This document shows positions 642-57,941 of a stretch of DNA of 64,000 nt, piece after piece. The notes under the pieces were generated by a model that did no database searches, had not been told where the DNA came from, and saw nothing but the letters and a program-made list of their open reading frames with translations. The stretch's first letter is position 1; the number at the start of each line of letters is the position of its first letter. A program made the translations under genes and the position numbers. The stretch lies in IMG/VR virus record IMGVR_UViG_3300042261_002390, positions 1 to 64,000 of that record; one strand, given 5' to 3'.

Positions 642-650
642 AGTATTTAT
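642..650 (+). promoter_or_regulatory. Putative late promoter motif AGTATTTAT (first of ~25 copies)
   Basis: Same GTATTTAT core recurs ~15-70 nt upstream of starts at 402(-), 667, 3909(-), 3986, 5177, 7760, 10254, 10863, 13002, 15110, 21296(-), 22811, 30013, 32212, 35920, 38615(-), 40772(-), 41076, 43980, 44419, 48997(-), 53850, 54986, 57942; CTATTTATA variant before 21398 and 22025. Confidence 0.75.
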
Positions 651-666
651 TATAAATTTTAAATCG

Positions 667-1266
667 ATGAGCACAAAAAATTTAATAAAAATCATTAATG
701 AAACTATTGAAGAATTTGATTTTCTCAATAACGAATCTTCGCTTATGGAACAGGAAACCATTGAATTGCTGAAAAATGAAGATTTACAGAAACGATTTAT
801 TTGTGATTCATTATTGGAGAGAAATGATAAAATAAAAATCCTTAATAATGAAACAGCTAGTTTAGACGGTAATTGGGAAGATGACCCTGAAAACGCAAAC
901 ATGCTTTCAATTCAATATGACCTAAAGTTACAATACACATATGATTCGAGTAAAGAACCTTTAGTATTTAATTTATTTTTTTATGGTGATAATGTTAGTA
1001 TTTCTACAGCAGATAGATTTGAAAAGGGCGATTATTACTCACCATCAGAAGGAGAATCTTGGTTTAGAAATATTGAATGGGATGATATTAATGTTGAATT
1101 GGCAACCGAAGAAGGTGATGAAATTAGATTTATAGCATTTGAAAAAGCACCGTATAATATTAAAAGAATATTCATACGTGAATTTGTCGAAAATTTTATT
1201 AGTTCATATACGAATATGGATGTTCGTGATAATATTGATAAATCACAAGTAACACAATTCTGCTGA
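667..1266 (+). CDS. Hypothetical late protein (acidic)
   Basis: 199-aa ORF behind late motif; N-terminal LIKIINE; no recognisable catalytic motif. Confidence 0.6.
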   Translation: MSTKNLIKIINETIEEFDFLNNESSLMEQETIELLKNEDLQKRFICDSLLERNDKIKILNNETASLDGNWEDDPENANMLSIQYDLKLQYTYDSSKEPLVFNLFFYGDNVSISTADRFEKGDYYSPSEGESWFRNIEWDDINVELATEEGDEIRFIAFEKAPYNIKRIFIREFVENFISSYTNMDVRDNIDKSQVTQFC

Positions 1267-1267
1267 G

Positions 1268-1681
1268 ATGAACGAAGAAAAAAAGAAAATACTCGATAAG
1301 ATTAATTTGCTCATCGATAAAAGAAAGGATGAGTTACTTCAAAGATTTCCACATATACATGAAATCGAAGATGGTATCATTATTCGATTTTTTACTAATT
1401 GGAATAATTGCAGTAATAATGAAGAAGTTAGATATAAAAGGTTTGTTAATGAAAGTGATGATGACGATATTACTGTTTTACATTTTATTCCAAAAGGAAC
1501 AAAACTTGAGTTAATGAAGCACGAGTATATCAACTCAATAATATGTATCAACGGTAGAATAAAAATTAAAATAGATAGTGAAGCATTTATACTTGAATCC
1601 AATAAAAAACTATATCTACCTAACAATGAGTTTGAAGCATACGCTTTTGAAGATACTTATGTAATTACACAAAATAAGTAA
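1268..1681 (+). CDS. Cupin-like beta-barrel protein
   Basis: Pattern HFIPKGTKLELMKHEYINSIICINGRIKIKID...ILESNKKLYLP resembles the cupin double-stranded beta-helix. Confidence 0.4.
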   Translation: MNEEKKKILDKINLLIDKRKDELLQRFPHIHEIEDGIIIRFFTNWNNCSNNEEVRYKRFVNESDDDDITVLHFIPKGTKLELMKHEYINSIICINGRIKIKIDSEAFILESNKKLYLPNNEFEAYAFEDTYVITQNK

Positions 1682-1896: not shown

Positions 1897-3909
1897 TTAT
1901 CGATAAATAATTCTACCACCTTTACTCACTAAAATATTTTCATTTACTTTTGATTCCCAAATAGCATTATGTAATACTTCAGGAGATGTTAATGCATTGT
2001 CATATATTCTTAACTTCTGAATACCACCAATAAATGATGTGTTAAAGTTTTGTTCAATAGTTAAATCATTTTTTCTCAAGTCTTGTACTAAAATATCAGA
2101 TGCGGTATATCTAAAGTTCTTAATAAATAAAGGTTTATCAATGTTAAAAGTATTTGATGTTTGAATCAATAAACCAACATTAATGAAATTTTGTCCACTA
2201 TTATCTGATGTTTTAATTACAGATTTTAAGTTATTCCATGTATTTTGACCAGTAATCAAGCTATTTTGAACAGTTCCACCAGTTAGTACACTATTTGCAT
2301 ACCAACCATAGTTGCTTAAATTTCCAAACATATCAATAACTGGTTCACCTGTTTCGCCATAATACATAATACCGTTAGTATATATGTATTCAAATTCATC
2401 CGGGAATGGATGTAACCCAAGTCTTTCTGCTGTTTGTATACTATTAACAGTAATTGGGAAAGAATATTCAATAGCATTATACACATTAACATCAGTAGTA
2501 TCACTGTATGCTAATATTGATAATAAGTTTGTTACAGAATTACCACTACTATCAACATTTCTAAAGAAACCATCATCAAATATTGATACATCGAAAGTAT
2601 AATCTCTATTAGACAACACTGATATTGGGTTATTAAATTTGATGAAATATGTATTTCCAGTACCACCGGTATAATCAACACGGAAAACAGTATAATCAAA
2701 CTTTTGTGTATCTGCACTTAATACTAGTCCTGATAATGGATTATCACCAATAAGCGGGTTTTCTTGAACCGAAAAATTGGTGTTTATATATGTAGTATCT
2801 TCGCCACTATATAATCCATACGTTTGATAGTCATAATGCCACGAATGTTCTAATCCAAATGAACCGCCACCCCAACTAATTGAATAAGGGACTCCGATTT
2901 GTTTTTCTCTTTGGTTAACAAATCCATGAAAATAAAACTCAGGAAAATTATATATAATCCAATTTGCTCGACCATTTACATAAAATATTAATTTACCTGT
3001 TCTTTGTTTACCACACTCTAGCGATATTGGAGAATTGAATACATAATCGGGAGTAAATACAACATCAATCATAGTAAATCCAGTTACTGTTATTGGTGTT
3101 GGAGATGTATTTGTAATAGTAAATCCAGATAAATCAATATATTTATATGCTAATCGTTTGTCATTTGTTAATTCAAATGCAATCATGTTATTCTTTATAT
3201 TATTGACTTGTGGGTGTTCACTATATTTAATCTCAGTGCTATCTTCGGGATAAATAAAACCTTTTTTAGTTATAGTTTCGCCAACAAATGCATTTAAATA
3301 ATCCCCGGCACTTGTAGTTACACCACTAGTTATTGTTATACCAGTAATTGTCTCACCGCTAAAATATGGATTATATTTATCTTCGGCACGAGCACCCATC
3401 ATAAAGAAAATCCCATGTGATTCGGGTAGAATATTTAAAACAGTTTCAATTGTAATACCATTATTATATCTTGCCGGGAATATAGTATAATTATAATCTT
3501 CTAATTTAAAAAATCCATGTAAATATCCACCGTTCAAATTAAAATAATTTCCACTTGTTGCAGTAATTCCGGTAATTGGTAGATATTCAGTATTAATTGT
3601 CGCACCACTCGTTTGACCAGTAGTTGGATTTAATATGTCATAAAATCCAATTTTATTCATTTTTAGGTACGTGTCATTAGGTGTAAGTGTTTCACCTTCC
3701 CACATTAGTCCATTAGCAACGTCAAATGATGTTAATCCAAAATCATATAAATTAATATTATCAGAAACAGCATTAGTCCACTTATTTAAACTAATTGTAG
3801 TTAGTCCAGTATTGAAGTCAATCCACGATTTAACGTTTGTTAAATCAATATGTATTGCTAAATTATTCGTAATTATACCATTTAAACATTCTAAATTCAT
3901 TTTGCACAA
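1897..3909 (-). CDS. Virion structural protein with LamG/concanavalin-A-like C-terminal motif
   Basis: 670 aa, Thr/Gly/Asn-rich beta-type composition; C-terminal FIGGIQKLRIYDNALTSPEVLHN is LamG-like; late motif upstream; start may be 3900. Confidence 0.5.
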   Translation of the reverse strand: MCKMNLECLNGIITNNLAIHIDLTNVKSWIDFNTGLTTISLNKWTNAVSDNINLYDFGLTSFDVANGLMWEGETLTPNDTYLKMNKIGFYDILNPTTGQTSGATINTEYLPITGITATSGNYFNLNGGYLHGFFKLEDYNYTIFPARYNNGITIETVLNILPESHGIFFMMGARAEDKYNPYFSGETITGITITSGVTTSAGDYLNAFVGETITKKGFIYPEDSTEIKYSEHPQVNNIKNNMIAFELTNDKRLAYKYIDLSGFTITNTSPTPITVTGFTMIDVVFTPDYVFNSPISLECGKQRTGKLIFYVNGRANWIIYNFPEFYFHGFVNQREKQIGVPYSISWGGGSFGLEHSWHYDYQTYGLYSGEDTTYINTNFSVQENPLIGDNPLSGLVLSADTQKFDYTVFRVDYTGGTGNTYFIKFNNPISVLSNRDYTFDVSIFDDGFFRNVDSSGNSVTNLLSILAYSDTTDVNVYNAIEYSFPITVNSIQTAERLGLHPFPDEFEYIYTNGIMYYGETGEPVIDMFGNLSNYGWYANSVLTGGTVQNSLITGQNTWNNLKSVIKTSDNSGQNFINVGLLIQTSNTFNIDKPLFIKNFRYTASDILVQDLRKNDLTIEQNFNTSFIGGIQKLRIYDNALTSPEVLHNAIWESKVNENILVSKGGRIIYR

Positions 3910-3985
3910 GAATTTATAATAAATACTATTGGACTTTAATTAATATTATCGTATTTATAGAAAATAATAAATTCTAAAGAATCTC

Positions 3986-5149
3986 ATGAATAAAAACATT
4001 AAACTAAGATTATTCGAAATGATGAATAGAGTTGGTGGAATGCCAATTGTTAATGAAGCTGATTCATTACCACCCGGAATTACTAATAATGACATCATTT
4101 CATTGGATGATTTTGTTGATTCAGGCAATATTCAAGAAGATACGACTGGTGTTCAAATGCAACCAGCAGATATAAAAAAAATTGTCGATAAAAGGAAATC
4201 TGATGCTCCACGTGATAGAGAAGACCCATATATTCATTCTAAGACAATTGAAATTATTGATAAAAATGGTAATGAAATCGACCAAGAACAGCTAAAAAAA
4301 ATAATAACGCAAAGACCACCAACACTTTTAAGTAGTAATGAAAAAGTGGGTAAAACAGGTATCTTAAAGATATCATTGCCTGCATATAAAGGATTATATT
4401 ACGATGAAAAAGATGGACAATTTAAAGTAGTTAATACGTGTCCAAACGCTGGTGAATGTAAACTATATTGCTATCAACAAAAGGGTAGGTCTGTTATGTA
4501 TGATAATGCTGCAATTAGTAAAACCAGAATATTAAACTTTTTACTAAACCATTGGGATGCATTTAAATATAAAATGGTTGATGAAATTGAAACAGCCAAA
4601 ATGAGCAATGATAAAAAGGGATTAAAAACTATCGTAAGATGGCATGATTCCGGGGATTTTATTTCTGATAAGTATCTTGATTTAGCTATGGATATTGCAA
4701 GGGAAACACCAGATGTTTTACATTATGCATATACTAAAATGGTTTCATCAGCAAAACGAGCAAACGTACCTAGTAATTTTGTGTTTAGATATTCATTAGA
4801 TACTGGTTCACCCGAAACCGGATTAGTTAACAAATATGAGGATAAACATACTGAAGTAGTGCCTAAGCAATTATTTAAAGACTTAATGTATGCTAAAAAA
4901 GAACCGATTAAAGGTGGAAAAGAATTTAAAAATATTTGGCATTATAATTCAAAACACGATTTAATCGAATTTAAAAACAGATTATCAAAACAATATGGAA
5001 TCGATGTAAATACAATTATAACATTTGATGAAATGCAAAAAATTCCTGAGCAAGGTGATAATAAGTGGAACGTAATTGTTACACCATCAGACCCGGACAC
5101 TGCAGCACATAGAAAAGATGTATTAGGTGTTTATTTATTGATTCATTAA
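3986..5149 (+). CDS. GP88-like phage protein (Cys cluster, radical-SAM-like)
   Basis: NTCPNAGECKLYCY Cys triad, IVRWHDSGDF and HYAYTK motifs characteristic of the Gp88-like family; N-terminal leader KLRLFEMM...IVNE. Confidence 0.65.
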   Translation: MNKNIKLRLFEMMNRVGGMPIVNEADSLPPGITNNDIISLDDFVDSGNIQEDTTGVQMQPADIKKIVDKRKSDAPRDREDPYIHSKTIEIIDKNGNEIDQEQLKKIITQRPPTLLSSNEKVGKTGILKISLPAYKGLYYDEKDGQFKVVNTCPNAGECKLYCYQQKGRSVMYDNAAISKTRILNFLLNHWDAFKYKMVDEIETAKMSNDKKGLKTIVRWHDSGDFISDKYLDLAMDIARETPDVLHYAYTKMVSSAKRANVPSNFVFRYSLDTGSPETGLVNKYEDKHTEVVPKQLFKDLMYAKKEPIKGGKEFKNIWHYNSKHDLIEFKNRLSKQYGIDVNTIITFDEMQKIPEQGDNKWNVIVTPSDPDTAAHRKDVLGVYLLIH

Positions 5150-5176
5150 TAAGTATTTATATAAAATTTAGTAATT

Positions 5177-5632
5177 ATGAAAAAGAACGACAAACAAAGA
5201 CTTTTCGAAGTCATGGGTAGGTTAGATAAAACATTTAAGCCAAAACTCAATGAAGACATAATGAACGCCGAACCAGAAGAACACCAAAACGAAGGCGCAA
5301 CCAATAAAGCTAAGTTAGAAGAATTGGTTAAAATGGCAAAGAAAGCATATAAACATTTGCCAGATGGTGAATTACCTTCATGGGTTCAAGATAATATTAC
5401 AATTGCAAAAGAACGCTTAGGTAGTGTTTGCGGTTGGTTGCATAGCGAAGAAGAAGCCGAAGAAACTGACATGGAAGGTGAACATCGTGATATGGATGAC
5501 GAAGAAGAACACGATGAAGAAGCCGAAGAAACTGAAACTGATGAAGAAGAATCTGACGATGAAGAATCAGAAGAAGAGTCTGAAGAACCAGAAAAAGAAT
5601 CAAAACCAAAAATTCCAGTAAAGAACTGGTAA
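5177..5632 (+). CDS. Putative head internal protein, acidic C-terminus
   Basis: Leader KQRLFEVMGRLDKTFKPKLNE; ELPSWVQDNITIAKERL motif; poly-Glu/Asp tail; late motif at 5152-5160. Confidence 0.6.
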   Translation: MKKNDKQRLFEVMGRLDKTFKPKLNEDIMNAEPEEHQNEGATNKAKLEELVKMAKKAYKHLPDGELPSWVQDNITIAKERLGSVCGWLHSEEEAEETDMEGEHRDMDDEEEHDEEAEETETDEEESDDEESEEESEEPEKESKPKIPVKNW

Positions 5633-7683: not shown

Positions 7684-7759
7684 CAAAATATCTTTTTTAC
7701 ACTAAAATAAGTATTTATGAGAAATGTAAATAATAATAGCTATTAATAAAACATAAAAA

Positions 7760-10223: not shown

Positions 10224-10253
10224 CGTTTCGAGTATTTATAAAAAAAATTTAAT

Positions 10254-10742: not shown

Positions 10743-10784
10743 TATTTATATATTGAGTTCATCTACCATTCGGAAGAAAGAAAT

Positions 10785-10822
10785 CGAGGCTCGACACGTC
10801 ATCAGAAATGTGTCGAGCCTTG
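10785..10822. other. GC-rich inverted repeat upstream of terL
   Basis: AGGCTCGACAC (10787-10797) / GTGTCGAGCCT (10810-10820), 11-bp perfect stem without a clear U-tract. Confidence 0.8.
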
Positions 10823-10862
10823 CTATTTTATAATTAATAGTATTTATTATAAAAAATTATAA

Positions 10863-12923: not shown

Positions 12924-13001
12924 ATATTAATTGTATTTATAATATAAACATACTTTTCGAAAATTATTAAGTATTTATAAAAAAATATAATATTTTATAA
13001 A

Positions 13002-15029: not shown

Positions 15030-15109
15030 TACTATCTCATTTATTTTTAGTTAAAAATGTCAACATTTACAGTTAAAATTAGTATTTATTATTAAATCAA
15101 TCTAACAAT

Positions 15110-21296: not shown

Positions 21297-21397
21297 ATTA
21301 TTGGATTTTTTATATAAATACGAACCCACAAAAATTACAAAATTATAATAATTATTGAAACTATTTAACTATTTATATCCATAATATATTAACATAA

Positions 21398-22726: not shown

Positions 22727-22810
22727 TAGATTTTAAGTAGATTTTTATTAAAAAATATACTTTTTTAGAATGATTATGTATTTATATAAAAATTAACAAC
22801 ATTTCGAAAT

Positions 22811-29963: not shown

Positions 29964-29997
29964 AATAGTACGATTATAAAGTATTTATACTAAAATG

Positions 29998-32184: not shown

Positions 32185-32211
32185 TTAGTATTTATATTAA
32201 AACTTTATAAA

Positions 32212-35863: not shown

Positions 35864-35894
35864 CAAATATAATCGATTAATAATTAAAATCAAA
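35864..35894 (-). promoter_or_regulatory. Bacteroidota-type promoter (TTTG-N19-TATATTTG)
   Basis: Plus-strand CAAATATA 35864-71 and CAAA 35891-94; full consensus match upstream of the KTSC-dut-thyA operon. Confidence 0.7.
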
Positions 35895-35919
35895 GAGTAT
35901 TTATATAAAAAATTAAAAT

Positions 35920-37467: not shown

Positions 37468-38615
37468 GGTTTTCCTATGTTATTGATATTAGTAATTGGT
37501 TTAAAATATTGAGAGTCTGTATTATTTTCAAACCAAACCTCACTAAATGCATTTTTGGTTATCAAATCATCCAAATCAGGACTTATATCAAATATCATTG
37601 CTGAAAATGCATATCTCTTTTTGTTTACAAATGGATTGTTAGTTCCAATTCCGGTTAATGGGTCGGTATAGCCTTCTGGCATAATATTTCTCCAAATAAA
37701 ATTACCTGTATTGACCGGATATTCTGTTGCATATGGTGGTATAGATTGTACTAAATCATAAGATGTACTACCAGTATTTGCTTTATATAAGTCACTTGTT
37801 AAATATCTTAATCTTATTGGCATAAATGGATTATATTTCCAAACTAATCTTGTTGAGCTATATGGCGTATAAATGTAAAAATATTGTGAATATTTTTGTG
37901 TTTGAGTAAATCCAGATTTATTATATGTAATAACATCACAAATTTTCTCATCATTTAATGTTTTTACAATATCATCGACATTCATTGTTTTTGTTAATAT
38001 CTCAGATTTTGTTGATGCCCCACCATTTGACCAAAACATACCAAATAATGATTCTTCCGGGGACAATACTTTCTTATATTGAGCATATAAATATAATTCA
38101 GTTACCGGAAATTTAAATTCATCATAATAATTCGATACATCTATATCTACATTGAAATTAAATGAATATATTTGTTCTCCAAATAAATTATTTGAAAACC
38201 CAACTGGAAATAATTCAAAATCATTTGGTGTTGCAATTACTTTAAAACATCTGCTATAACTATTTCCGCTAATATTAGTATAGCCTGTTGATGGTCTAAC
38301 TAAATAAAAATCAAATGAATTCAATAAGTTTTTACTATTTCCGCTATATTGAGGTGAAAAGAAATCTTCAAAATCATAATAGTCATTTTTTAGACCATTA
38401 AGTAATGACATATATTCAATTCTGCCATAAATTCGATATATTTGATTTTCGGCTCTTTCAGCATAAAAAACTTCAGTAGCACTAAGAAAATTATTAATAT
38501 CGTATTCGATAATTTCCTTAGTTTTATTCATTAGTTCAACCTTACCTGACATGTCAGTATTAATTGACACTATATTTTGTTTACTACCTAATAATATTTC
38601 AAATTTATTATCCAT
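37458..38615 (-). CDS. Hypothetical virion protein
   Basis: 385 aa; late motif at ~38619-38627 on the minus strand. Confidence 0.45.
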   Translation of the reverse strand: MDNKFEILLGSKQNIVSINTDMSGKVELMNKTKEIIEYDINNFLSATEVFYAERAENQIYRIYGRIEYMSLLNGLKNDYYDFEDFFSPQYSGNSKNLLNSFDFYLVRPSTGYTNISGNSYSRCFKVIATPNDFELFPVGFSNNLFGEQIYSFNFNVDIDVSNYYDEFKFPVTELYLYAQYKKVLSPEESLFGMFWSNGGASTKSEILTKTMNVDDIVKTLNDEKICDVITYNKSGFTQTQKYSQYFYIYTPYSSTRLVWKYNPFMPIRLRYLTSDLYKANTGSTSYDLVQSIPPYATEYPVNTGNFIWRNIMPEGYTDPLTGIGTNNPFVNKKRYAFSAMIFDISPDLDDLITKNAFSEVWFENNTDSQYFKPITNINNIGKPCQ

Positions 38616-38639
38616 ATCTTATAAATACCAATAATTTTA

Positions 38640-40772: not shown

Positions 40773-41075
40773 ATAGAAAATATTTTTCTATAAATACTAA
40801 ATTCATAAAAACCATATTAATATGAAAAAAAATAAAAATTTTGCAAATATTTTTTTTGAGAAATTTAACATGATTTTCAACAAAAAAATTAAAAAATCGA
40901 AAAATATGACTTCGAAAAACAAAAAAAGTGAAAAATTATGATTTTATGGTATATATGAGGCAATTACAATATTATTATGAAAGCTCCTTTTGCATTATTT
41001 TTTAGTATTTATTGATAACAGCAAAATATTGCTTAGAGATTTAAAATAACAAGAAAATTTAAATAATTAATAAAC

Positions 41076-43932: not shown

Positions 43933-43979
43933 ATTACGTATTTATATAAAAAATTACAACAATTAAAAATAATTTTAAA

Positions 43980-44354: not shown

Positions 44355-44418
44355 TATTTTTAATACGACAGTATTTATTAAAAAAACATAAATAGTATAA
44401 ATTAAATAGTTAAATATT

Positions 44419-45728: not shown

Positions 45729-45750
45729 TGCGACAAATATAGTAATAATT

Positions 45751-48997: not shown

Positions 48998-49065
48998 ATT
49001 ATTAATATTTACATTGATTTTATTTTTTCTAAAATAGTTTTAGTACATATAAATACTAATTATTA

Positions 49066-49105
49066 AAAATTAATGGTGACCGATAATTCAATCACCATTA
49101 ATTTT
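49066..49105 (-). terminator. 14-bp hairpin at the end of the sigma-like gene
   Basis: AAAATTAATGGTGA / TCACCATTAATTTT. Confidence 0.6.
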
Positions 49106-49871
49106 AATCATCTAAATAATCATTTTTTTCAATAAAATAAATGTCTTTGAATGGTTTAATAGCTAATCTAATTTCTTTTGTAGTTAAATTAGTTTGTTCT
49201 TTCAAGTATAGTAAAATTTTATTTTTTGCAAATTTATTTGTAACTCTTTTATTGTATTTACCTGATGGACTGTCTTCCATAAACAATAAATGCCAATTTT
49301 TTAGAATATTAATAATTGCATCACCCACTATAATTTCATTCTTTTTCATTAACTTGTCACTATCAATTCTGATTTCAATTTTTTCAACAACTAAGTTAAT
49401 CAATTGCTCTAAATGATGTTGTGTTTCTAGCTCAATTTCATAGCTATAATCACTATTTTCATTTATCTCATCAACAAAATCATCGTAACATAAATTAATT
49501 TTTTTCTCTGAATAACTTTTTCTACTATGGTCACGATAATAATTTCTAATAATGGTCTGGCAATAGCTAAATGCTTTAGTTCTATTGCCAGACTTAGTTA
49601 TTTTATTAGGATTAAATTTAACCATGTGCTCAATCAAATGAGATAATGCATTTGATTCAACTTCATTCATATCGTAATTTCCAATATGAATTGGATATCT
49701 CCTTAATATTGATTGTATCATTTTGCGAAATGGCTCAATCAGAATTTCATTATATATCTGGTTCTTTTCTTCAATTGAATTTGAATTTATATAATCAATA
49801 ACTGCTTGTTCTTCTCTTTCTGCAAAATATGGTGCACCATTGTCACTATTTCTCATTTTACATAAATTCAA
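49104..49871 (-). CDS. Phage sigma-factor-like protein (sigma70 region 2; late-sigma candidate)
   Basis: PYF...YNEIL...MIQSILRRY...HLIEHMVKFNPNK...AFSYCQTIIRNYY resembles region 2.1-2.4 (F(N/D)P, AFSY). Confidence 0.65.
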   Translation of the reverse strand: MNLCKMRNSDNGAPYFAEREEQAVIDYINSNSIEEKNQIYNEILIEPFRKMIQSILRRYPIHIGNYDMNEVESNALSHLIEHMVKFNPNKITKSGNRTKAFSYCQTIIRNYYRDHSRKSYSEKKINLCYDDFVDEINENSDYSYEIELETQHHLEQLINLVVEKIEIRIDSDKLMKKNEIIVGDAIINILKNWHLLFMEDSPSGKYNKRVTNKFAKNKILLYLKEQTNLTTKEIRLAIKPFKDIYFIEKNDYLDD

Positions 49872-49887
49872 AACTAAATGTTATTTA

Positions 49888-50700: not shown

Positions 50701-50714
50701 CTATTAACTTTTAA

Positions 50715-51857: not shown

Positions 51858-51862
51858 TTTTT

Positions 51863-52603: not shown

Positions 52604-52892
52604 TGTTTTTGTTTTTTAATAGCTCCGCTTGATATTGGAGTTCTTCGTTTAATTTTTTTATCAATTCTTCATGTTGTTCAATTAATTTTTCATTGGTAAT
52701 ATATATTGGGTTAATACACTCAATTCTGGTATCTTGTTTTTGTACTGGAATTACAATAATTTCAGCTTCAATAGATTTTGGAGATATCTTTTCAGTTATT
52801 CTCTTAACAAAAGCTGGAATATCTTCCGAACGAATCCCGGCAACGCCAACATATATTACTAATATTTGATTAATCTTTTTTTTCATTTTCAA
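52596..52892 (-). CDS. Hypothetical protein
   Basis: 98-aa ORF, coupled to neighbours. Confidence 0.55.
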   Translation of the reverse strand: MKMKKKINQILVIYVGVAGIRSEDIPAFVKRITEKISPKSIEAEIIVIPVQKQDTRIECINPIYITNEKLIEQHEELIKKLNEELQYQAELLKNKNNE

Positions 52893-53709
52893 CTAAGAGT
52901 TGTTTATTATCTTTATTTAACTTATTTGTTTTAGTTTCACCTGTTAATGCGATATATTCTTTATACTTTTCAATAATTATATTAATTATTGGGTTTCTAA
53001 CACTATCATCAGTATTATCCATTTCAATAACACCAATATCATCAACATTTTTATACATTTTAAGTAGTGGCTGTAATGAACTTTCCGATTTATTTCTTAA
53101 GTCAATTTGGTCTATATCACCAAGTAATATTAATTTACTATTACTACCAATACGAGTTAAAAGTGTGAGTGCATTATCTAACGATATATTTTGCATTTCG
53201 TCAGCGATAATAATACAATCATCTAAAGTAGTTCCTTTAATAAAAGCAAGTGGAAATGGTCTTAATATTTCTTTTTCAAGAAGTATTTCAATATTTGCTT
53301 CAGGAATTATTTTTTCCATATTAATATAGAAACTCCACATATATGGGTCAAATTTTTCCTTCACACCACCTTTTAAAAAACCAAGTTCTTCATCTTTTAA
53401 TGTTCTTACTGATTTAACTAAATATAATCTCTTATATCTATTAGTATTTTTTCGCAATAAACTAAGTGCATATGCTAAAGCAACAAAAGTTTTACCAGTA
53501 CCAGCACGACCAGAACAAATGGTAATTTCTTTATTTTTTATTGAATTAATTAATTTTTTCTGACTTTCATTTTTTGCTATAATTTTTAAGTCATTAGGAA
53601 CTAATTTTGCAATTTCGTATTTAATTAAATTAACCTGTTCAGTGCTATTAACCTTAACATTAGTTAATTCATTATAATCATTTTCTTCTTTAACTCTATC
53701 TCTAGGCAT
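52870..53709 (-). CDS. phoH: PhoH-family ATPase
   Basis: AKNESQ, SGRAGTGKT, GFLKG, IKGTTL, ADEMQN, LTRIG, GDIDQID, VRNPI. Confidence 0.95.
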   Translation of the reverse strand: MPRDRVKEENDYNELTNVKVNSTEQVNLIKYEIAKLVPNDLKIIAKNESQKKLINSIKNKEITICSGRAGTGKTFVALAYALSLLRKNTNRYKRLYLVKSVRTLKDEELGFLKGGVKEKFDPYMWSFYINMEKIIPEANIEILLEKEILRPFPLAFIKGTTLDDCIIIADEMQNISLDNALTLLTRIGSNSKLILLGDIDQIDLRNKSESSLQPLLKMYKNVDDIGVIEMDNTDDSVRNPIINIIIEKYKEYIALTGETKTNKLNKDNKQLLVENEKKD

Positions 53710-53849
53710 ATTTATAATTAAGTGTTTTTAATATAATTATTTGCTTATATATGCTATTACGTAATAAAAAAAATAATCTTGAATTATGATGAAAAAAAAA
53801 TATTCAGTATTTATCGATGAAATAATAATTAAATATAAAAAATTATAAA

Positions 53850-54755
53850 ATGAGCGATAATTTAACACCACAAAAAGAAAGTATCGGCGATGCATTAAAA
53901 AAATATAGTGAAAGTCGAGGTATTGTAAATGATGAACAAGTTGTAACTAATGTTAATATACCTAAAGCATCATATAATCAACAAGATTATGAACAATTAA
54001 TGTCTAAAGAAACTGACCCTGATTTAATTACTTCATATGAAATAGTTAAACTACCATCAAATGGTTTATTTTACTCTAACAGAATATCTGAAGTAAAAAT
54101 TGAATATATGACTTCTAAAGACGAAGATTTGTTAACAACACCTTCATTAATTGAAAATGGTACTGTATTGGATGTTTTATTAAAAAGAAAAATAAAGACC
54201 CCGGGAATTAATGTTGATACATTACTTGAAGGTGATAGAAATGCATTACTTTTATTCTTAAGAACTTCAAGTTATGGTTCAGATTATACAGTTCAAGTAA
54301 CTGACCCACGCTCTGGTATACCTTTTACAACAAAAGTAGATTTACTAAAATTGAAATATAAAACAATCAATGAATTGCCAGATGAAAATGGATACTTTAG
54401 TCTTGAGATTCCTATGAGAAAAAAGAATGTAAAAGTGAAATTATTATCATCCGGGGAAGATAGAAACATAAAAAAAAGAGCAGATGCAATTCAAGAAGCA
54501 TATAATGAAGAATTCAATCAATATAATACACTTAAATTAAAAGCAACTATAATATCAATTAATGGTAAAACAGATAGGTCATATATTGATAAATTTGTTG
54601 ATGCAATGCCAGCACTTGATGCATATGCTATTCGTAGAAAAATACTTGATGTGAGTCCGGACGTTGATATGTCATATGAATTTATGGCAAAAGACGGATA
54701 TACTTTTAATGCTAATCTAACAGTAGGAATTGATTTTTTTTTCCCCGGGATTTAG
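53850..54755 (+). CDS. Baseplate hub/tail assembly chaperone (T4 gp26-like)
   Basis: VKLPSNG..Y, YMTSKDEDLL, GDRNALL.FLR..SYG..Y, ends IDFFFP; upstream of the tape measure gene. Confidence 0.8.
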   Translation: MSDNLTPQKESIGDALKKYSESRGIVNDEQVVTNVNIPKASYNQQDYEQLMSKETDPDLITSYEIVKLPSNGLFYSNRISEVKIEYMTSKDEDLLTTPSLIENGTVLDVLLKRKIKTPGINVDTLLEGDRNALLLFLRTSSYGSDYTVQVTDPRSGIPFTTKVDLLKLKYKTINELPDENGYFSLEIPMRKKNVKVKLLSSGEDRNIKKRADAIQEAYNEEFNQYNTLKLKATIISINGKTDRSYIDKFVDAMPALDAYAIRRKILDVSPDVDMSYEFMAKDGYTFNANLTVGIDFFFPGI

Positions 54756-54943
54756 CAGGTGAGTATAAAAAAATGGTTAATGAAGAAATATATATTTTAA
54801 CAAAACATGCTAAATTCCAAGCAGATTATATAGAAAATCTTCCAATTTATCGTAGAAGACATTTTCTATATTTATTACAGAAGGAAAATGAGGAAATTGA
54901 AAAAGCTCAAGAAGCTGCAAAATCAAAAAGACCGAGAAAATAA
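54734..54943 (+). CDS. gp51-like chaperone in the -1 frame (not in track); probable programmed frameshift product
   Basis: -1 frame open from the T9 run (54734) to TAA 54941-43: ...EEIYILTKHAKFQADYIENLPIYRRRHFLYLLQKENEEIEK; internal ATG at 54773. Confidence 0.7.
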   Translation, partial: FFFPRDLAGEYKKMVNEEIYILTKHAKFQADYIENLPIYRRRHFLYLLQKENEEIEKAQEAAKSKRPRK

Positions 54944-54985
54944 AAATCCCGGTCTTTTGTATTTATAATAAACAAATTTTAATAC

Positions 54986-57523
54986 ATGGCAACTAACGAC
55001 TTAAATACACTAAAAGCACTGATTGCTGAACAAGAAGCACTAAATCAATTATATCTTAATGCAACGGATATACAACAAAAAAAAGATGCAATTGAAAAGC
55101 AAATTTTAAACGATAAAATGCTTCAACGTGAGCAAGAAAGGCTTATCGGTGAAATGTTGGCTGGTAATCTTAATCTAAGTAAAGAAGACCTTAAAACGCT
55201 TAATGGACAGGTAGATAGACATCGTAAGATAAATGAATACTTGAAGGATGAAAATAAAAATCGTAAAACTGGTGTTGATTTAGTTAAAAAGTTAAATACT
55301 GGTTTATCTAAGACTTGGGAGTATTTGATGCAATCTGATAAAGTAATCAGAGAAACAATCCGTAATTTAGGCATGTCAGGTGCTAAAGCCGATGCAATGA
55401 GAAAATCATTTGAATTATCGGCAATGAATGTTGCTCGTATGGGTGGTAGTTTAGCAACAATTCAATCAGTTATGGAAGGTTATGCTGAAGAAACTGGTAG
55501 AGCACGTGCATTAACTGCTTCAATGGTTGAAGACATTACATCCATTGGACTTGGAACTGGATTAGGAATTGAGCAAGCAACCAAATTAGGCGCACAGTTT
55601 GAATTAATGGGTTTTGACGCTAGAAAAACAGCACAATATGTTCAAGGTATTGTTGATACTTCTGAAAGAATGGGTGTTAATACGACCAAAGTATTAAAAA
55701 ACTTAAACGATAACTTTAAAAAAGTCAATACATATAGCTTTAAATCAGGAAGTAAAGGAATTGCTGAAATGGCGATGAATGCTGAAAAATTTAGAGTTGA
55801 TATGAAAGATGCATTATCTGCTGCCGATGCTGCTAAAAGCCTTGAAAAAGCAATTGATTTGGCAGCAAATTTACAGGTAATGGGTGGTGAATTTGCAAAA
55901 ACAGACCCGTTAGAATGGATGTATCTTGCACGTAATGAACCAGATAAACTAACAAAAAAATTATCTGAAATGACTAGGGGTTTAGTCACGTTTAAAAAAA
56001 ATAGTGAAGGTACATTTGAAAAATTTATTAGTCCTGCTGATAGACAAAGGCTAGAAAGTGTTGCACAATCATTAGGTATTACTGCCGAACAAATGACAGA
56101 AATAACAGAAAGACGTGCAGAACTAGACTTAATGGCTAGACAATTAGCTGGAACTGGATTAACTGACAGAGAAAAAGAATTAGTTGAAGGTGCTGCAATA
56201 TTTAATGCTAAATCAGGTAAATTTGAAGTCCAATTAGCAGGTAGAATGCAAGATATATCGACATTAACAGCAAATCAAGCAAAATCATTTGTTAAAGAAC
56301 AAGCATCGTTAAAAGAAAGAGCAATGGCTGCTCAAACATTTGATGAAGCACTTAAAGCCACAATCGAGGAATTTAAAACAGTATTGCTTCCAATGCTCAA
56401 AGGTATTAATGATATGCTTAAGTGGGTTAGACCTATTGCGGTGAGTTTCAACAACTTCATTAATAGCATTACTAAAACAGATTTAGGTGGAACATTATTA
56501 AAAGCTGCTGGTTGGATGATGGCTGCAGGTTTTTTGATTAATAAAGCAGTAATAGCTTTTAGTTTAAGCGGTAAAGGACTTGGCGAAAGGTTGATTGATA
56601 AAATATCAGGTAATGGTACAAAAACTACAGGATTAGGTGGGTATATAAACCAAAGAAGTGCAGCTAGAAAAGCTAGATTAGCTACTGGTGGTGGAATTAG
56701 TAATCCAAATGCGGGAAAAGGATTAATGCGTGGTGGTACTGGTATAGGTGCTGCTGCACTTGGTATAGGTGCTGGTATAGGTGCTGCTGCTGCAGGTATT
56801 AGTTTATTAGCAGATTCTATGTCAAAATTAACACCACAACAAGCAGAAACATTAAAAAGTATTGTAAGTTCTATTGGGTGGTTTGTAGTTGGTGGCATAG
56901 CTGCTGCAGTTGGAATTAGTTTAATTGGTAAAAGTGCTGAATTATCTGCTGCTGGTTTAGGTATGTTATCATTAACTGCAATAAGTATTGGTGCTGCAAT
57001 GGTTGGCGTTGGGTTTGGTATTAAATTAGCTGCTGATGGTTTAGCTAATTTAGTCATTTCAAGCAAAGGTGCTGGCACAGATATGTTAAAAGTTGCCGGA
57101 GGTATTGCAGCAATTGGGGCATCTTTAGCTATGTTTAGTTTCGGTGGTATTGGTTTAGGAGTTTTTGCTGCAACAATGGCAACTATTGCATTAACAACAC
57201 CAGCCTTAGTTAAAGCAGGAACAGCATTTGAGCAAATGGGTAATGCAGTACTAAATTTAAAAGGTACAAAAGAAGACTTTGTTGCAATTCAAAATGCAGT
57301 TGAATCAATATCTAAAGCGAATAATAAAGGTGGAGGTATGTTAGCTGAATTAGCAACATTATTAAAATCTCCATTAAAGGTAGAATTTGTTGACAAAAAT
57401 GTTGCAGTTGTAAGTGATATAACATTAAACATTGATGGTCAGAAGTTTATGCAAAAAGTTTATAAAGCACCTGCTGCTGTTCAAAAAAATGTTGAGGCAA
57501 AAACACAAGGTTTACCGGGCTAA
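54986..57523 (+). CDS. Tape measure protein
   Basis: 845 aa, Ala/Gly-rich helical protein with hydrophobic stretches; follows the chaperone pair; precedes baseplate genes. Confidence 0.85.
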   Translation: MATNDLNTLKALIAEQEALNQLYLNATDIQQKKDAIEKQILNDKMLQREQERLIGEMLAGNLNLSKEDLKTLNGQVDRHRKINEYLKDENKNRKTGVDLVKKLNTGLSKTWEYLMQSDKVIRETIRNLGMSGAKADAMRKSFELSAMNVARMGGSLATIQSVMEGYAEETGRARALTASMVEDITSIGLGTGLGIEQATKLGAQFELMGFDARKTAQYVQGIVDTSERMGVNTTKVLKNLNDNFKKVNTYSFKSGSKGIAEMAMNAEKFRVDMKDALSAADAAKSLEKAIDLAANLQVMGGEFAKTDPLEWMYLARNEPDKLTKKLSEMTRGLVTFKKNSEGTFEKFISPADRQRLESVAQSLGITAEQMTEITERRAELDLMARQLAGTGLTDREKELVEGAAIFNAKSGKFEVQLAGRMQDISTLTANQAKSFVKEQASLKERAMAAQTFDEALKATIEEFKTVLLPMLKGINDMLKWVRPIAVSFNNFINSITKTDLGGTLLKAAGWMMAAGFLINKAVIAFSLSGKGLGERLIDKISGNGTKTTGLGGYINQRSAARKARLATGGGISNPNAGKGLMRGGTGIGAAALGIGAGIGAAAAGISLLADSMSKLTPQQAETLKSIVSSIGWFVVGGIAAAVGISLIGKSAELSAAGLGMLSLTAISIGAAMVGVGFGIKLAADGLANLVISSKGAGTDMLKVAGGIAAIGASLAMFSFGGIGLGVFAATMATIALTTPALVKAGTAFEQMGNAVLNLKGTKEDFVAIQNAVESISKANNKGGGMLAELATLLKSPLKVEFVDKNVAVVSDITLNIDGQKFMQKVYKAPAAVQKNVEAKTQGLPG

Positions 57524-57941
57524 AAGTGTTAAAAAATGTTAAAAAATGGCATATTTGAGAAAATCACTAGAATATGTCATTTTTTTCTTGTAACTTTGAC
57601 GCAGTTTTGCTTCGCTCACGCAAGCTTCCGCTACACAACACAGCTTTTCTCGCTTCTTCGAAACCAGAAACAAACTTACAATGTTTGTGATTTGATTTAA
57701 AAATCGAACCAAAACTTGAAATAAAAGGATAGCTATGCTCATATTGTAACCAATATTCAAAAATAAAATCAAAAGTAATAAATTTATTTGAAAAATTGAA
57801 TAATTATAATTAAATCCCAATTATTGTTTTAGTATATATTGTTGATATCACTAGCTCCGGGTTTGGAGTAGACTCCGGCAATGTAAAATTAGATATTATA
57901 AATTTAATATGCAAGTATTTATTTTAAAATATCACATTTTA

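What the first reader, a model, noticed from the sequence alone, without database searches (positions are those of the whole stretch)
642..57922. Late-promoter-like motif GTATTTAT is the reverse complement of the T4 late promoter
About 25 structural or late genes on both strands have GTATTTAT(A/T) ~15-70 nt upstream, oriented with the gene (e.g. 642, 3951, 5152, 7710, 10231, 10839, 12970, 15081, 22777, 29980, 32188, 35896, 41004, 44370, 53805, 54959, 57914; minus strand 418-426, 3919-3927, 21313-21321, 40789-40798, 49048-49057). It is not seen before the helicase, thyA/dut, phoH or GT operons. The T4 gp55 late promoter reads TATAAATA on the sense strand, whereas here the sense strand reads TATTTATA. 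Inference: a clade-specific late promoter read by the sigma-like protein at 49104-49871.
Basis: partly seen in the sequence, partly recalled or inferred. Interest (0 to 1): 0.65.

Follow-up and report, generated by a model that had tools for sequence, protein, structure and literature searches.

The report
Late promoter of a Flavobacterium-type jumbo phage
A 14-base signal, GTATTTATAnnAAA, sits just upstream of the head, tail, packaging and lysis genes of an uncultured giant phage and is very probably its late promoter, read by a phage protein distantly related to the late sigma factor gp55 of phage T4; no transcript data were available to confirm this.

Summary
GTATTTAT occurs 34 times in the window against 10±3 expected. 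About 25 copies lie 5-63 nt upstream of a same-strand start codon; the other ~9 match the chance expectation. In the whole 246-kb record, 49 of 77 copies fall in the 5% of DNA that is intergenic. At 250 co-directional gene junctions the sense:antisense ratio is 34:1.

The full consensus is GTATTTAT-A-n-n-AAA, with no -35 box. It precedes terminase, portal, the capsid operon, sheath, tube, baseplate, tail spike, amidase and homing-endonuclease genes. It does not precede the helicase, thyA/dut or phoH/GT operons.

It is kept at orthologous sites in dozens of related 320-357 kb phages while the flanks drift. A (C/A)TATTTATAAnnAAA form precedes late genes in Flavobacterium phage immuto.

ORF 49104-49856(-) is sigma-like:
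- 44 of 78 homologues hit Sigma70_r2.
- The best structural match is T4 gp55 (Z 9.8).
- A predicted complex with Flavobacterium beta' clamp helices passes its controls.

"Reverse complement of T4" is formally true but not mechanistic. Read in the same direction, the motif matches TATAAATA at 6 of 8 positions, including both deep-pocket adenines.

Verdict: a new variant of the T4-type late system. No transcript data could be obtained.

The parts
412..425 (-). late promoter motif GTATTTATATTAAA, 15 nt before the ATG of ORF 1-402(-)
   Evidence: PWM 19.6 bits; hairpin plus T-run terminator 14 nt upstream
643..656 (+). late promoter motif, 16 nt before ORF 667-1266
   Evidence: PWM 19.4
3913..3926 (-). 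late promoter motif, 18 nt before ORF 1897-3900(-); divergent partner of the 3951 site
   Evidence: PWM 18.8
3951..3964 (+). late promoter motif, 27 nt before ORF 3986-5149
   Evidence: PWM 18.7
5153..5166 (+). late promoter motif, 16 nt before ORF 5177-5632 (followed by homing endonuclease 5646-6422)
   Evidence: PWM 19.2; PHROG
7711..7724 (+). late promoter motif, 41 nt before ORF 7760-10171 (803 aa, unknown)
   Evidence: PWM 15.6
10232..10245 (+). late promoter motif, 14 nt before ORF 10254-10742; directly after a terminator hairpin
   Evidence: PWM 18.3; terminator
10840..10853 (+). late promoter motif, 15 nt before terminase large subunit 10863-12923
   Evidence: PWM 20.9; PHROG terminase E 9e-35
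12933..12946 (+). late promoter motif, distal copy of a tandem pair before the portal gene
   Evidence: PWM 17.2
12971..12984 (+). late promoter motif, 23 nt before portal gene 13002-15029
   Evidence: PWM 20.9; PHROG portal E 2e-53
15082..15095 (+). late promoter motif, 20 nt before ORF 15110-15889
   Evidence: PWM 17.7
21308..21321 (-). late promoter motif, 17 nt before the 1508-aa ORF 16770-21296(-)
   Evidence: PWM 20.3
22778..22791 (+). late promoter motif, 25 nt before ORF 22811-24433, which is followed by major head protein 24462-26144
   Evidence: PWM 18.9; PHROG major head protein E 1e-65
29981..29994 (+). late promoter motif, 24 nt before ORF 30013-31131
   Evidence: PWM 17.5
32188..32201 (+). 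late promoter motif, 16 nt before ORF 32212-32625
   Evidence: PWM 20.0
35897..35910 (+). late promoter motif, 15 nt before ORF 35920-36684
   Evidence: PWM 19.2
38615..38628 (-). late promoter motif (weaker, GTATTTATAAGATA) only 5 nt before the called ATG of ORF 37458-38615(-); the start codon may be miscalled or the mRNA leaderless
   Evidence: PWM 13.6
40784..40797 (-). late promoter motif, 17 nt before ORF 38640-40772(-)
   Evidence: PWM 21.4
41005..41018 (+). late promoter motif, 63 nt before tail sheath gene 41076-43886
   Evidence: PWM 15.1; PHROG sheath E 6e-64; motif kept in 38 of 47 distinct relatives while the flanks vary
43938..43951 (+). late promoter motif, 34 nt before ORF 43980-44354, after a terminator hairpin
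   Evidence: PWM 19.2; terminator
44371..44384 (+). late promoter motif, 40 nt before tail tube gene 44419-44910
   Evidence: PWM 16.7; PHROG tail tube E 5e-26
49043..49056 (-). late promoter motif (GTATTTATATGTAC, lacks the AAA) 51 nt before ORF 48602-48997(-); heads the operon that runs to the baseplate-hub-like ORF 45751-46641
   Evidence: PWM 15.2; the same 14-mer, or a close variant of its last six bases, is kept at this site in 36 of 56 distinct relatives
53807..53820 (+). variant site (GTATTTATCGATGA, under 10 bits) 35 nt before the T4_baseplate-family gene 53850-54755
   Evidence: exact 8-mer; Pfam T4_baseplate E 1e-8
54959..54972 (+). late promoter motif, 19 nt before ORF 54986-57523
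   Evidence: PWM 21.0
57915..57928 (+). late promoter motif, 19 nt before the 1067-aa ORF 57942-61145
   Evidence: PWM 18.4
49104..49856 (-). gene for the gp55-like sigma protein (250 aa from the ATG; P0002): N-terminal sigma-region-2-like domain of ~140 aa plus a C-terminal helical domain of ~110 aa. Last gene of the phoH-GT operon, which has no late motif.

Best explanation
GTATTTATAnnAAA is the late-gene core promoter of this phage. The phage is an uncultured jumbo myovirus with T4-type head, tail and packaging genes. Its host is probably a flavobacterium or another member of Bacteroidota.

Proposed mechanism:
- The motif is a single -10-like element with no -35 box.
- The 250-aa product of ORF 49104-49856(-) is made from an early or middle operon that lacks the motif.
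- That protein binds the clamp helices of the host RNA polymerase beta' subunit through a sigma-region-2-like domain, as T4 gp55 does.
- It reads the non-template strand of TATTTATA.

In the gp55 register, G is -14, TATTTATA is -13 to -6 and AAA is -3 to -1. Transcription would then start at or just after the last A. That gives leaders of about 10 nt at the modal spacing, which is acceptable in a genome that uses no Shine-Dalgarno sequences.

Shown:
- The motif, its orientation, its gene class and its conservation.
- The sigma fold of the protein.

Inferred:
- That the motif is a promoter.
- That this protein, with host polymerase, reads it.
- The position of the transcription start.
For: 1. 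Enrichment and orientation.
- 34 copies against 10 expected.
- 49 of 77 copies lie in the 5.2% of DNA that is intergenic.
- 51 PWM hits reach >=14 bits, against 1-4 in controls.
- At co-directional junctions, 34 copies are sense and 1 is antisense.

2. Core-promoter position.
- The modal gap between the 8-mer and the ATG is 16 nt; most gaps are 13-41 nt and the extremes 5-128 nt.
- The short gaps leave no room for a separate -10 or -7 box downstream.
- The wide range argues against a translation signal.
- 10 of 55 sites follow a hairpin plus T-run within 60 nt, against 1.2% of random positions.

3. Regulon.
- With the motif: terminase, portal, sheath, tube, baseplate, the capsid operon, tail spike or virion protein, baseplate wedge, amidase and five homing endonucleases.
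- Without it: helicase, thyA, dUTPase, phoH, GT and the sigma gene.

4. Footprints.
- The 8-mer is invariant, and the downstream six bases nearly so, at the orthologous site after the sigma gene in 36 of 56 relatives.
- It is kept before the sheath gene in 38 of 47 relatives, with variable flanks.
- It is enriched in 5 related records.

5. Phage immuto.
- (C/A)TATTTATAAnnAAA occurs 12 times forward and once reverse in the structural region of Flavobacterium phage immuto.
- Immuto has a homologue of the sigma-like protein and no Sigma70_r2 hit anywhere in its genome.

6. The protein.
- 44 of 78 homologues hit Sigma70_r2.
- The six best hits of the profile search of the PDB are sigma factors, including gp55; all are weak, E 0.03-0.7.
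- The AF2 model has pLDDT 91.
- The best structural match is T4 gp55, chain 7d7d_F: Z 9.8, 118 residues aligned, rmsd 5.1. The next 30 rows are all sigma factors or sigma-like proteins (one a scaffold engineered on sigma domain 2).
- hhalign against gp55 is collinear from residue 6 (E 6e-4, probability 28%). gp55 Y97, which stacks on A-12, aligns with the near-invariant Y98.

7. Predicted complex of residues 1-140 with Flavobacterium beta' residues 1-450.
- ipSAE is 0.71 and the best control 0.00.
- That mark was reached by 51 of 78 solved complexes and 2 of 108 mismatched pairs.
- The runs agree in >=94% of contacts, and the partner pLDDT is >=77.
- The interface on beta' is residues 272-346, the region where sigma region 2 and gp55 bind the clamp helices in solved complexes.

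8. No phage RNA polymerase was detected in this record or in 5 relatives.

9. A separate bipartite GTAAC-N16-CGTA class accounts for the canonical ECF-type sigma.
Against: - There are no transcript 5' ends and no expression-timing data.
- The protein itself has no Pfam or PHROG hit.
- Sequence similarity to gp55 is weak: PDB profile E 0.73 and hhalign probability 28%.
- Z 9.8 for a helical domain is only moderately above background, and other sigma factors score within about 1 unit.
- The complex prediction may partly reflect memory of solved sigma-beta' complexes.
- Complete relatives carry 2-3 canonical sigma genes, any of which could in principle read the motif.
- No gp33, gp45 or gp44 homologue was found, so the T4 activation scheme cannot simply be transferred.
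- The C-terminal domain has no assigned fold.
- The record is only ~75% complete.
Confidence: 0.62

Rival explanations
1. The motif is the late promoter, but one of the phage's canonical ECF-type sigma factors reads it. One such gene lies at about 164.9 kb of this record, and complete relatives have 2-3. On this view the 49104-49856 protein has another role.
For: Canonical Sigma70_r2/r4 proteins are encoded here and in relatives. RpoE-like sigmas in the T4-superfamily phages PhiM9 and P10VF have been proposed as late sigmas that replace gp55/gp33 (PMC4621102).
Against: - ECF sigmas need a bipartite -35 'AAC' / -10 'CGT' promoter. Exactly such a class (GTAAC-N16-CGTA, about 27 sites) exists upstream of a different gene set.
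- The late motif has no -35 element.
- Phage immuto has the TATTTATA motif and the gp55-like homologue but no Sigma70_r2 hit.
Confidence: 0.1
2. The sigma-like protein is the promoter-specificity subunit of an unrecognised phage-encoded RNA polymerase, as gp226 is for the phage AR9 non-virion polymerase. That enzyme, not the host's, would transcribe the late genes.
For: AR9 gp226 (7s01_A) is among the top structural matches, at Z 8.6. The phage is a jumbo phage with many large ORFs of unknown function.
Against: - No RNA_pol_Rpb2_6, Rpb1_2 or T7-type polymerase domain was found in this record or in 5 relatives, 3 of them complete.
- The 160-kb phage immuto uses the same motif.
- The predicted complex with host-type beta' clamp helices passes its controls.
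- Caveat: very divergent polymerases could escape the Pfam models.
Confidence: 0.07
3. The motif is the binding site of a late activator or other DNA-binding protein that works with the host's own sigma-A, as with Mu C, P2 Ogr or RinA. On this view it is not a core promoter element.
For: Activator-dependent late promoters are common in phages. A conserved CCTTTTG element lies about 22-29 nt upstream of the sheath-gene motif in relatives.
Against: - At the modal spacing only 16 nt separate the motif from the ATG. There is no room for a Bacteroidetes -7 box (TAnnTTTG) plus a start site downstream, and none is seen.
- The motif resembles a -10 element and matches the T4 late promoter at 6 of 8 positions.
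Confidence: 0.05
4. The motif acts in RNA, as a processing site or a translation enhancer, and not as a transcription start signal.
For: The modal distance to the start codon is tight (16 nt), and the sequence downstream is A-rich.
Against: - Distances range from 5 to 128 nt. The sheath-gene site keeps a spacing of 48-70 nt in most relatives.
- Sites follow terminators and lie in divergent intergenic regions.
- The motif is absent before early genes, which need translation just as much.
Confidence: 0.03

Closest known systems
Phage T4 late promoters (TATAAATA), read by gp55 with gp33 and the gp45 sliding clamp
   Same: - A single 8-bp A/T-rich -10-like element with no -35 box.
- Placed directly before head, tail, packaging and lysis genes, and also before homing-endonuclease genes.
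- 6 of 8 positions are identical in the same orientation. These include the adenines at -12 and -8 that gp55 inserts into deep pockets (PMC7892883).
- The candidate reader has a sigma-R2-like domain plus a long helix pair, and its closest solved structure is gp55.
- The terminase, portal, capsid, sheath and baseplate genes are T4-type.
   Different: - Positions -10 and -9 are TT, not AA.
- There is an extra conserved G at -14 and an AAA at -3 to -1.
- The gp55 pocket residues for A-9 (N13, H95) are not kept in the weak alignment.
- The protein is 250 aa, against 185 aa, and has an extra C-terminal helical domain of about 110 aa.
- No gp33, gp45 or gp44 homologue was detected.
- The host is probably in Bacteroidota.
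Late promoters of T4-like cyanophages (NATAAATA) with gp55, gp33 and gp45 (from general knowledge)
   Same: A -10-only late promoter in distant members of the T4 superfamily. The terminase of this phage is about 28% identical to cyanophage gp17.
   Different: Cyanophages keep the T4 consensus core and the gp33/gp45 partners. This lineage has a changed core, and no such partners were detected.
ECF sigma-dependent promoters (-35 'AAC', -10 'CGT')
   Same: They are used by phage-encoded sigma-70-family factors. This same genome has such a class (GTAAC-N16-CGTA) and a canonical ECF-type sigma.
   Different: The late motif is not bipartite and has neither the AAC nor the CGT signature.
Bacteroidetes housekeeping promoters (-33 TTTG, -7 TAnnTTTG) (from general knowledge)
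   Same: Boxes matching TAnnTTTG precede the non-late operons of the window, which is consistent with the inferred host.
   Different: The late motif does not fit TAnnTTTG and has no -33 element.
Phage AR9 non-virion RNA polymerase promoter-specificity subunit gp226
   Same: A sigma-like fold that recognises a late promoter as single-stranded DNA; a structural match at Z 8.6.
   Different: AR9 encodes its own multisubunit polymerase, and its late promoter sequence is different. No phage polymerase was detected here.

Membership tests
T4-type (gp55-dependent) late promoter | A single -10-like octamer with no conserved -35 element | tested here: met
   The information profile of 51 aligned sites shows no signal upstream of -3 relative to the G, apart from a weak W at -14.
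T4-type (gp55-dependent) late promoter | Consensus TATAAATA on the non-template strand | tested here: not met
   The sense strand reads TATTTATA, a 6 of 8 match. At co-directional junctions, 34 copies are sense and 1 is antisense.
T4-type (gp55-dependent) late promoter | Precedes virion, packaging and lysis genes and not early or replication genes | tested here: met
T4-type (gp55-dependent) late promoter | Transcription starts about 6 nt downstream of the octamer, late in infection | not testable with these tools
T4-type (gp55-dependent) late promoter | Activation through gp33 and the gp45 sliding clamp | tested here: inconclusive
   No hit came from the Pfam gp45 models, the T4 gp45 sequence or the T4 gp44 sequence, in this record or in complete relatives. 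Divergent analogues are not excluded. gp33 was not searched for.
Sigma-70 family (region 2) | Match to the Sigma70_r2 profile | tested here: inconclusive
   The window protein has no hit at E<=0.01. However, 44 of 78 homologues do hit, with a best E of 5e-7, and the family profile's six best PDB hits are sigma factors, though all weak at E 0.03-0.7.
Sigma-70 family (region 2) | Sigma domain-2 fold | tested here: met
   The AF2 model has pLDDT 91. The top 31 VIA-align matches are all sigma factors or sigma-like proteins (one an engineered scaffold on sigma domain 2), with Z from 9.8 to 5.8.
Sigma-70 family (region 2) | Binds the beta' clamp helices of core RNA polymerase | tested here: inconclusive
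   This rests on a prediction only. ipSAE is 0.71 against a best control of 0.00, a mark reached by 51 of 78 solved complexes and 2 of 108 mismatches. The interface on beta' is residues 272-346. No experiment supports it.
T4 gp55 family | Sigma-R2 homology domain followed by a long helix-loop-helix | tested here: met
   Chain 7d7d_F residues 10-135 align to model residues 9-138, at Z 9.8 with 118 residues aligned. The model has helices at 95-120 and 124-133.
T4 gp55 family | Significant sequence similarity to gp55 | tested here: inconclusive
   hhalign gives probability 28% and E 6e-4 over 113 collinear columns. The PDB profile search gives E 0.73.
T4 gp55 family | About 185 aa, ending in a sliding-clamp-binding tail, with no sigma-4-like domain | tested here: not met
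   The protein is 250 aa and has a conserved C-terminal helical domain of ~110 aa. Its tails are variable, often acidic and hydrophobic, and no conserved clamp motif was shown.
ECF sigma-dependent promoter | Bipartite -35 AAC / -10 CGT with a spacer of about 16 nt | tested here: not met
   The late motif lacks both signatures. A separate class in the same genome has them.
Bacteroidetes sigma-A promoter | -7 box TAnnTTTG with a -33 TTTG | tested here: not met
   The motif does not fit this pattern. TAnnTTTG boxes are seen instead before non-late operons.

The most novel reading that the evidence does not exclude
The 250-aa protein is a single-chain late sigma that combines the gp55 function with the flap-binding function that T4 assigns to the separate gp33. 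The gp55 part is the sigma-2-like domain that reads TATTTATA. The second function would lie in its extra C-terminal domain, which is weakly sigma-4-like.

On this reading, late transcription in this large lineage of Bacteroidota phages would not need a sliding clamp. The protein would be an evolutionary intermediate between ordinary two-domain sigma factors and the split gp55/gp33/gp45 system of T4.

Together with host-type TAnnTTTG promoters and an ECF-type GTAAC-N16-CGTA class, it would form a three-tier sigma cascade in a 320-360 kb phage.
Probability: 0.3. Interest if true: 0.7.

Novelty: new variant of a known kind. Interest (0 to 1): 0.55.

Why it matters
**A usable annotation.** Transcription control in phages of Bacteroidota is almost unstudied, and most genes of jumbo phages have no assigned function. 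A sharply defined late promoter marks about 50 transcription units of this genome as late. It does the same for hundreds of related metagenomic genomes, which gives a functional hint (virion, assembly or lysis) for many large unknown ORFs.

**What it says about the T4 system.** The T4 late-promoter logic, a -10-only element read by a minimal sigma, reaches far outside the classical T4-like phages. Here the core sequence is changed and the sigma has a different domain make-up. No clamp or co-activator was detectable.

**A route to experiment.** Flavobacterium phage immuto is cultured and uses the same core motif together with a homologue of the protein. The proposal can therefore be tested directly. 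Specificity changes at -10 and -9 can be compared with the solved gp55 open complex.

Tried and rejected
- **RNA evidence.** No read-level test of start sites was possible, and I did not try another route.
- **Near-identical phage DNA in GenBank.** None was found.
- **Foldseek against the PDB with the full model.** Nothing reached E<=0.001, although several sigma factors were among the weak rows. The VIA-align wide search was needed.
- **C-terminal domain on its own (second AF2 model, pLDDT 90).**
  - The best Z was 6.5, to unrelated helical proteins.
  - Sigma-4 domains of sigma-28, sigma-H, sigma-L and a phage sigma scored only Z 4.6-5.4.
  - The profile had no PDB sequence hit.
  - The fold therefore remains unassigned.
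- **gp45 clamp and gp44 clamp loader.** There were no hits in this record, in 3 complete relatives or in immuto. This is not evidence of absence.
- **Phage-encoded RNA polymerase domains.** None were found.
- **A third lineage.** The uncultured 484-kb phage LR756508.1 has a homologue 24.5% identical. A 40-kb piece around that gene shows no enriched upstream word and no TATTTATA strand bias. This is uninformative.
- **The 'insertion' in the sigma-like gene of some relatives.** I suspected an intron or intein. It is a second, tandem paralogue about 32% identical.
- **Literature.** Full-text searches for GTATTTATA, for TATTTATA with phage and promoter, for gp55 or late promoter with Bacteroidetes, and for immuto found no description of this motif.
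- **G-to-C covariation at the first motif base.** I considered whether it covaries within the clade. C variants are sporadic and G stays dominant.

Full report
**What the window is**

The window is the first 64 kb of a 246,149-bp IMG/VR virus record with 31% G+C, estimated to be ~75% complete.
- The terminase is a T4 gp17-type enzyme. Its best named relatives are Flavobacterium phage vB_FspM_immuto (27% identity) and T4-like cyanophages.
- The portal, major head protein, prohead protease, sheath, tube and baseplate genes are also T4-type.
- Close relatives of its genes lie on metagenomic contigs of 320-357 kb, some with direct terminal repeats. This is therefore a fragment of a jumbo phage from a large uncultured clade.
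- Only 10 of 298 ORFs have a Shine-Dalgarno-like core, below the random rate, and leaders are 48% A.
- Several non-late operons are preceded by boxes that fit the Bacteroidetes -7 consensus TAnnTTTG.
- These features, and the fact that the only cultured relatives infect Flavobacterium, point to a host in Bacteroidota. This is an inference.

**The observation**

*Counts*
- GTATTTAT occurs 34 times in the window, against 9.99 ± 3.22 in dinucleotide shuffles (maximum 19).
- In the whole record, 49 of 77 copies lie in the 5.2% of DNA that is intergenic.

*Consensus*
- Aligning the 51 copies that have a same-strand gene start within 110 nt gives G-T-A-T-T-T-A-T-A-n-n-A-A-A.
- The A at position +13 is present in 50 of 51 sites.
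- There is no -35-like signal.

*Specificity and orientation*
- A position weight matrix finds 51 sites at ≥14 bits, against 1-4 in Markov-chain controls.
- 51 of 55 sites at ≥12 bits have an ATG opening a long same-strand ORF within 130 nt.
- The modal gap between the 8-mer and the ATG is 16 nt; most gaps are 13-41 nt and the extremes are 5 and 128 nt.
- The strand test is unambiguous. At 250 co-directional gene junctions the motif is present in sense 34 times and in antisense once.
- In the window, 24 sites pass 12 bits, and 53807 is a weaker variant. The remaining ~9 copies lie in or at the edge of genes, or far from a same-strand start, and their number equals the chance expectation.

**What lies behind the motif**

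In the window it precedes:
- terminase large subunit (10863);
- portal (13002, two tandem copies of the motif);
- the operon that ends in the major head protein (22811 to 24462);
- sheath (41076) and tube (44419);
- a T4_baseplate-family gene (53850, variant site);
- the operon containing a baseplate-hub-like gene (49056 down to 45751);
- many large ORFs with no family hit.

Outside the window it precedes a tail-spike or virion protein, a baseplate wedge subunit, an amidase and five GIY-YIG/HNH homing endonucleases.

It does not precede:
- the helicase operon (28021-29963, -);
- the thymidylate synthase/dUTPase operon (32659-35851, -);
- the phoH-glycosyltransferase operon (49104-53709, -), whose last gene is the sigma-like ORF.

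This is the composition of a T4-like late regulon. T4 homing-endonuclease genes being served by late promoters is from general knowledge.

**Why it is a core promoter**

- Ten of 55 sites follow a hairpin plus T-run within 60 nt, against 1.2% of random positions.
- Others lie back to back in divergent intergenic regions (for example 3913-3926 and 3951-3964).
- At the modal spacing only 16 nt separate the motif from the start codon. No further -10 or -7 element plus a start site can fit downstream, so the motif must itself be the -10-like element.
- The gap varies widely. Before the sheath gene it is 63 nt here and 48-70 nt in most relatives. That argues against a ribosome-level signal.

**Conservation**

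- GTATTTATA is enriched in five related records: 80 matches against 27 for the control pattern, 45/26, 46/8, 51/13 and 22/3.
- After the sigma-like gene, 36 of 56 distinct relatives keep the 8-mer, followed by ATGTAC or a close variant. The surrounding intergenic sequence and its length vary. Three relatives have C in place of G. Most of the rest have an extra gene inserted at that point.
- Before the sheath gene, 38 of 47 distinct relatives keep the motif. These relatives have sheath proteins 60-75% identical.
- The most distant relatives, with sheath proteins 39-41% identical, have ATATTTAT.
- In the cultured Flavobacterium phage immuto, (C/A)TATTTAT(A/T)nnnAA precedes the portal, sheath, tube, baseplate hub, a virion protein, a tail fibre and other genes. 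The spacing is the same.
- In immuto's structural 50 kb the motif occurs 12 times forward and once reverse.
- The core TATTTATA…AAA is therefore much older than this clade. Only the first base differs.

**The sigma-like protein**

ORF 49104-49856(-) encodes 250 aa from its ATG. It has no Pfam or PHROG hit of its own.

*How widespread it is*
- The word search found 821 relatives.
- The exhaustive search found 664 cluster representatives.

*Evidence that it is sigma-like*
- 44 of 78 diverse homologues match Sigma70_r2.
- The six best hits of the family profile in the PDB are sigma factors, including T4 gp55, although all are weak (E 0.03-0.7).
- An AlphaFold2 model built with that alignment has pLDDT 91.
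- Foldseek gave only weak rows.
- The exhaustive structural alignment ranks T4 gp55 first: chain 7d7d_F, Z 9.8, rmsd 5.1, 118 residues, model 9-138 on chain 10-135.
- It is followed by sigma-B, pro-sigma-K, AR9 gp226 and more than 25 other sigma factors.
- A profile-sequence comparison with gp55 is collinear from residue 6 of both proteins, with 113 columns, E 6e-4 and probability 28%.

*Residues against bases*
- The gp55 open complex shows the non-template adenines at -12, -9 and -8 flipped into pockets (PMC7892883).
- Placed in that register, TATTTATA keeps A-12 and A-8 and replaces A-10 and A-9 by T.
- In the weak alignment, gp55 Y97 (stacks on A-12) and F86 correspond to the near-invariant Y98 and to F81.
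- The A-9 pocket residues N13 and H95 correspond to E13 and F96.
- This pattern is suggestive only, because the alignment is of low confidence.

*Predicted complex*
- Residues 1-140 were folded with residues 1-450 of Flavobacterium johnsoniae beta'. The score was ipSAE 0.71 and the best control 0.00.
- That mark was reached by 51 of 78 solved complexes and 2 of 108 mismatched pairs.
- The runs agree in ≥94% of contacts, and the partner pLDDT is ≥77.
- The interface is beta' residues 272-346, the region where sigma region 2 and gp55 bind the clamp helices in solved complexes.
- Because sigma-beta' complexes are solved, this shows likeness and not binding.

**Which sigma reads which promoter**

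The record also encodes a canonical ECF-type sigma, with regions 2 and 4, at ~164.9 kb. Complete relatives carry two or three.

A second motif class, TTTGTAAC(C/A)TTTT-N-AACGTATAAG, precedes about 27 small genes. Nearly all lie at 188-246 kb. It reduces to GTAAC-N16-CGTA, which carries the hallmark 'AAC' and 'CGT' of ECF promoters.

The natural pairing is:
- the ECF-type sigma with that bipartite class;
- the gp55-like protein with the -10-only late motif.

Phage immuto supports this. It has the TATTTATA motif and the gp55-like homologue, but no Sigma70_r2 hit in its whole genome.

No multisubunit or T7-type RNA polymerase domain was found in this record or in five relatives. The host enzyme is therefore the likely catalytic partner.

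Only one member of the gp55-like family is present in this record. Some relatives carry a tandem paralogue.

**How this differs from T4**

- The protein has an additional C-terminal helical domain of ~110 aa, conserved across the family (consensus …NE.KVG.ALI.IL.NW…NK..IL…RE.T.L.TK.IR…K.FK..Y).
- Modelled on its own (pLDDT 90), this domain has no clear structural neighbour. Sigma-4 domains appear only at Z 4.6-5.4.
- No gp45, gp44 or gp45-like Pfam match was found here, in complete relatives or in immuto. The clade does, however, have a family-B DNA polymerase.
- Whether late transcription here is coupled to a sliding clamp is open. The extra domain might take over the flap-binding role that gp33 plays in T4, but that is speculation.

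- The identification of the motif, of its gene class and of a sigma-like reader stands.
- The emphasis on the reverse complement does not. TATAAATA and TATTTATA are near-palindromic relatives. The sense-strand reading is fixed by the 34:1 strand test, and in that reading the motif is a two-base variant of the T4 late promoter.
- The motif is not private to this clade.

**Limits**

- No transcript data could be obtained.
- Timing ('late') is inferred from gene content.
- The start site is inferred from the gp55 and sigma-70 registers, at positions +13 or +14 counting the G as 0.
- The sigma-promoter pairing is inferred by elimination, fold and co-occurrence.
- Full-text searches found no earlier description of this motif. 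That covers only the held library.

Noticed in passing
G000:C1:188000-246149 (outside the window), also 81309 and 84279; sigma gene at G000:C1:~164883-165518(+): A second promoter-like class, TTTGTAAC(C/A)TTTT-N-AACGTATAAG (GTAAC-N16-CGTA), has about 27 copies. Nearly all are on the + strand, 9-50 nt before small ORFs. It has the AAC/CGT signature of ECF sigma promoters. A canonical Sigma70_r2+r4 protein is encoded just after a primase-like ORF. It is probably an early or middle class with its own phage sigma.
   Followed up: partly
window 26194-26201(+), 29998-30005(-), 35864-35871(-), 45734-45741(-), 61488-61495(+): Boxes that fit the Bacteroidetes -7 consensus TAnnTTTG, often TATATTTG, lie 5-34 nt before the non-late operon heads. 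These are the Mom-like/endonuclease gene, the helicase operon, the thyA/dUTPase operon, the exonuclease gene and ORF 61527. Genome-wide enrichment is modest: 23 oriented intergenic copies against 8-15 for control patterns.
   Followed up: partly
whole record: There is essentially no Shine-Dalgarno usage. Only 10 of 298 ORFs have an AGGA/GGAG/GAGG core at -20 to -4, against 5.5% of random windows. Leaders are 48% A. This is consistent with a host in Bacteroidota.
   Followed up: yes
window 5646-6422(+), 26231-27688(+); G000:C1:81643-82314, 82581-83249, 117931-118773(-), 138423-139436(-), 197816-198556: There are many free-standing GIY-YIG/HNH homing-endonuclease genes. Five have their own late promoter. 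The one at 26231-27688 is fused to a Mom-like DNA-modification domain.
   Followed up: partly
L015:1386-2499, L036, L040, L055 (relatives): In some relatives the sigma-like gene is followed at once by a second, tandem paralogue whose sigma-2-like part is about 30-34% identical. At first this looked like a 360-nt insertion. This record has a single copy.
   Followed up: yes
window 40976-41004 and the orthologous sites in L113-L165: Before the sheath gene, the late motif is preceded by a conserved CCTTTTG(C/A)…TTTTTTA stretch at about -29 to -1. The stretch is kept across relatives. It is not seen at late promoters in general. It may be an upstream element or a regulator site for this highly expressed gene.
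   Followed up: no
window 10742-10839: A further exact GTATTTAT copy, without the AAA, overlaps the stop codon of ORF 10254-10742. About 50 nt later comes a strong hairpin (GGCTCGACAC…GTGTCGAGCC) with a T-rich tail, and then the terminase promoter at 10840. This could be a short transcript or an attenuator.
   Followed up: no
window 21398-21838 upstream (about 21365-21378): The ORF that heads the prohead-protease operon has only a C-variant, CTATTTATATCC, scoring under 10 bits. Occasional C variants also occur at orthologous sites in relatives. C or A is the rule in phage immuto.
   Followed up: partly
whole record: IMG/VR labels the record 'provirus'. However, close relatives are 320-357 kb with direct terminal repeats, and composition is uniform. 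The record looks like a ~75% fragment of a virulent jumbo phage.
   Followed up: no
G000:C1:~81570-81617 and ~82510-82556: The sequences just upstream of two late promoters end in tRNA-like T-arm and acceptor motifs (…GGTTCGATTCC…). tRNA genes probably lie next to the homing-endonuclease genes. This was not checked with the tRNA tool.
   Followed up: no
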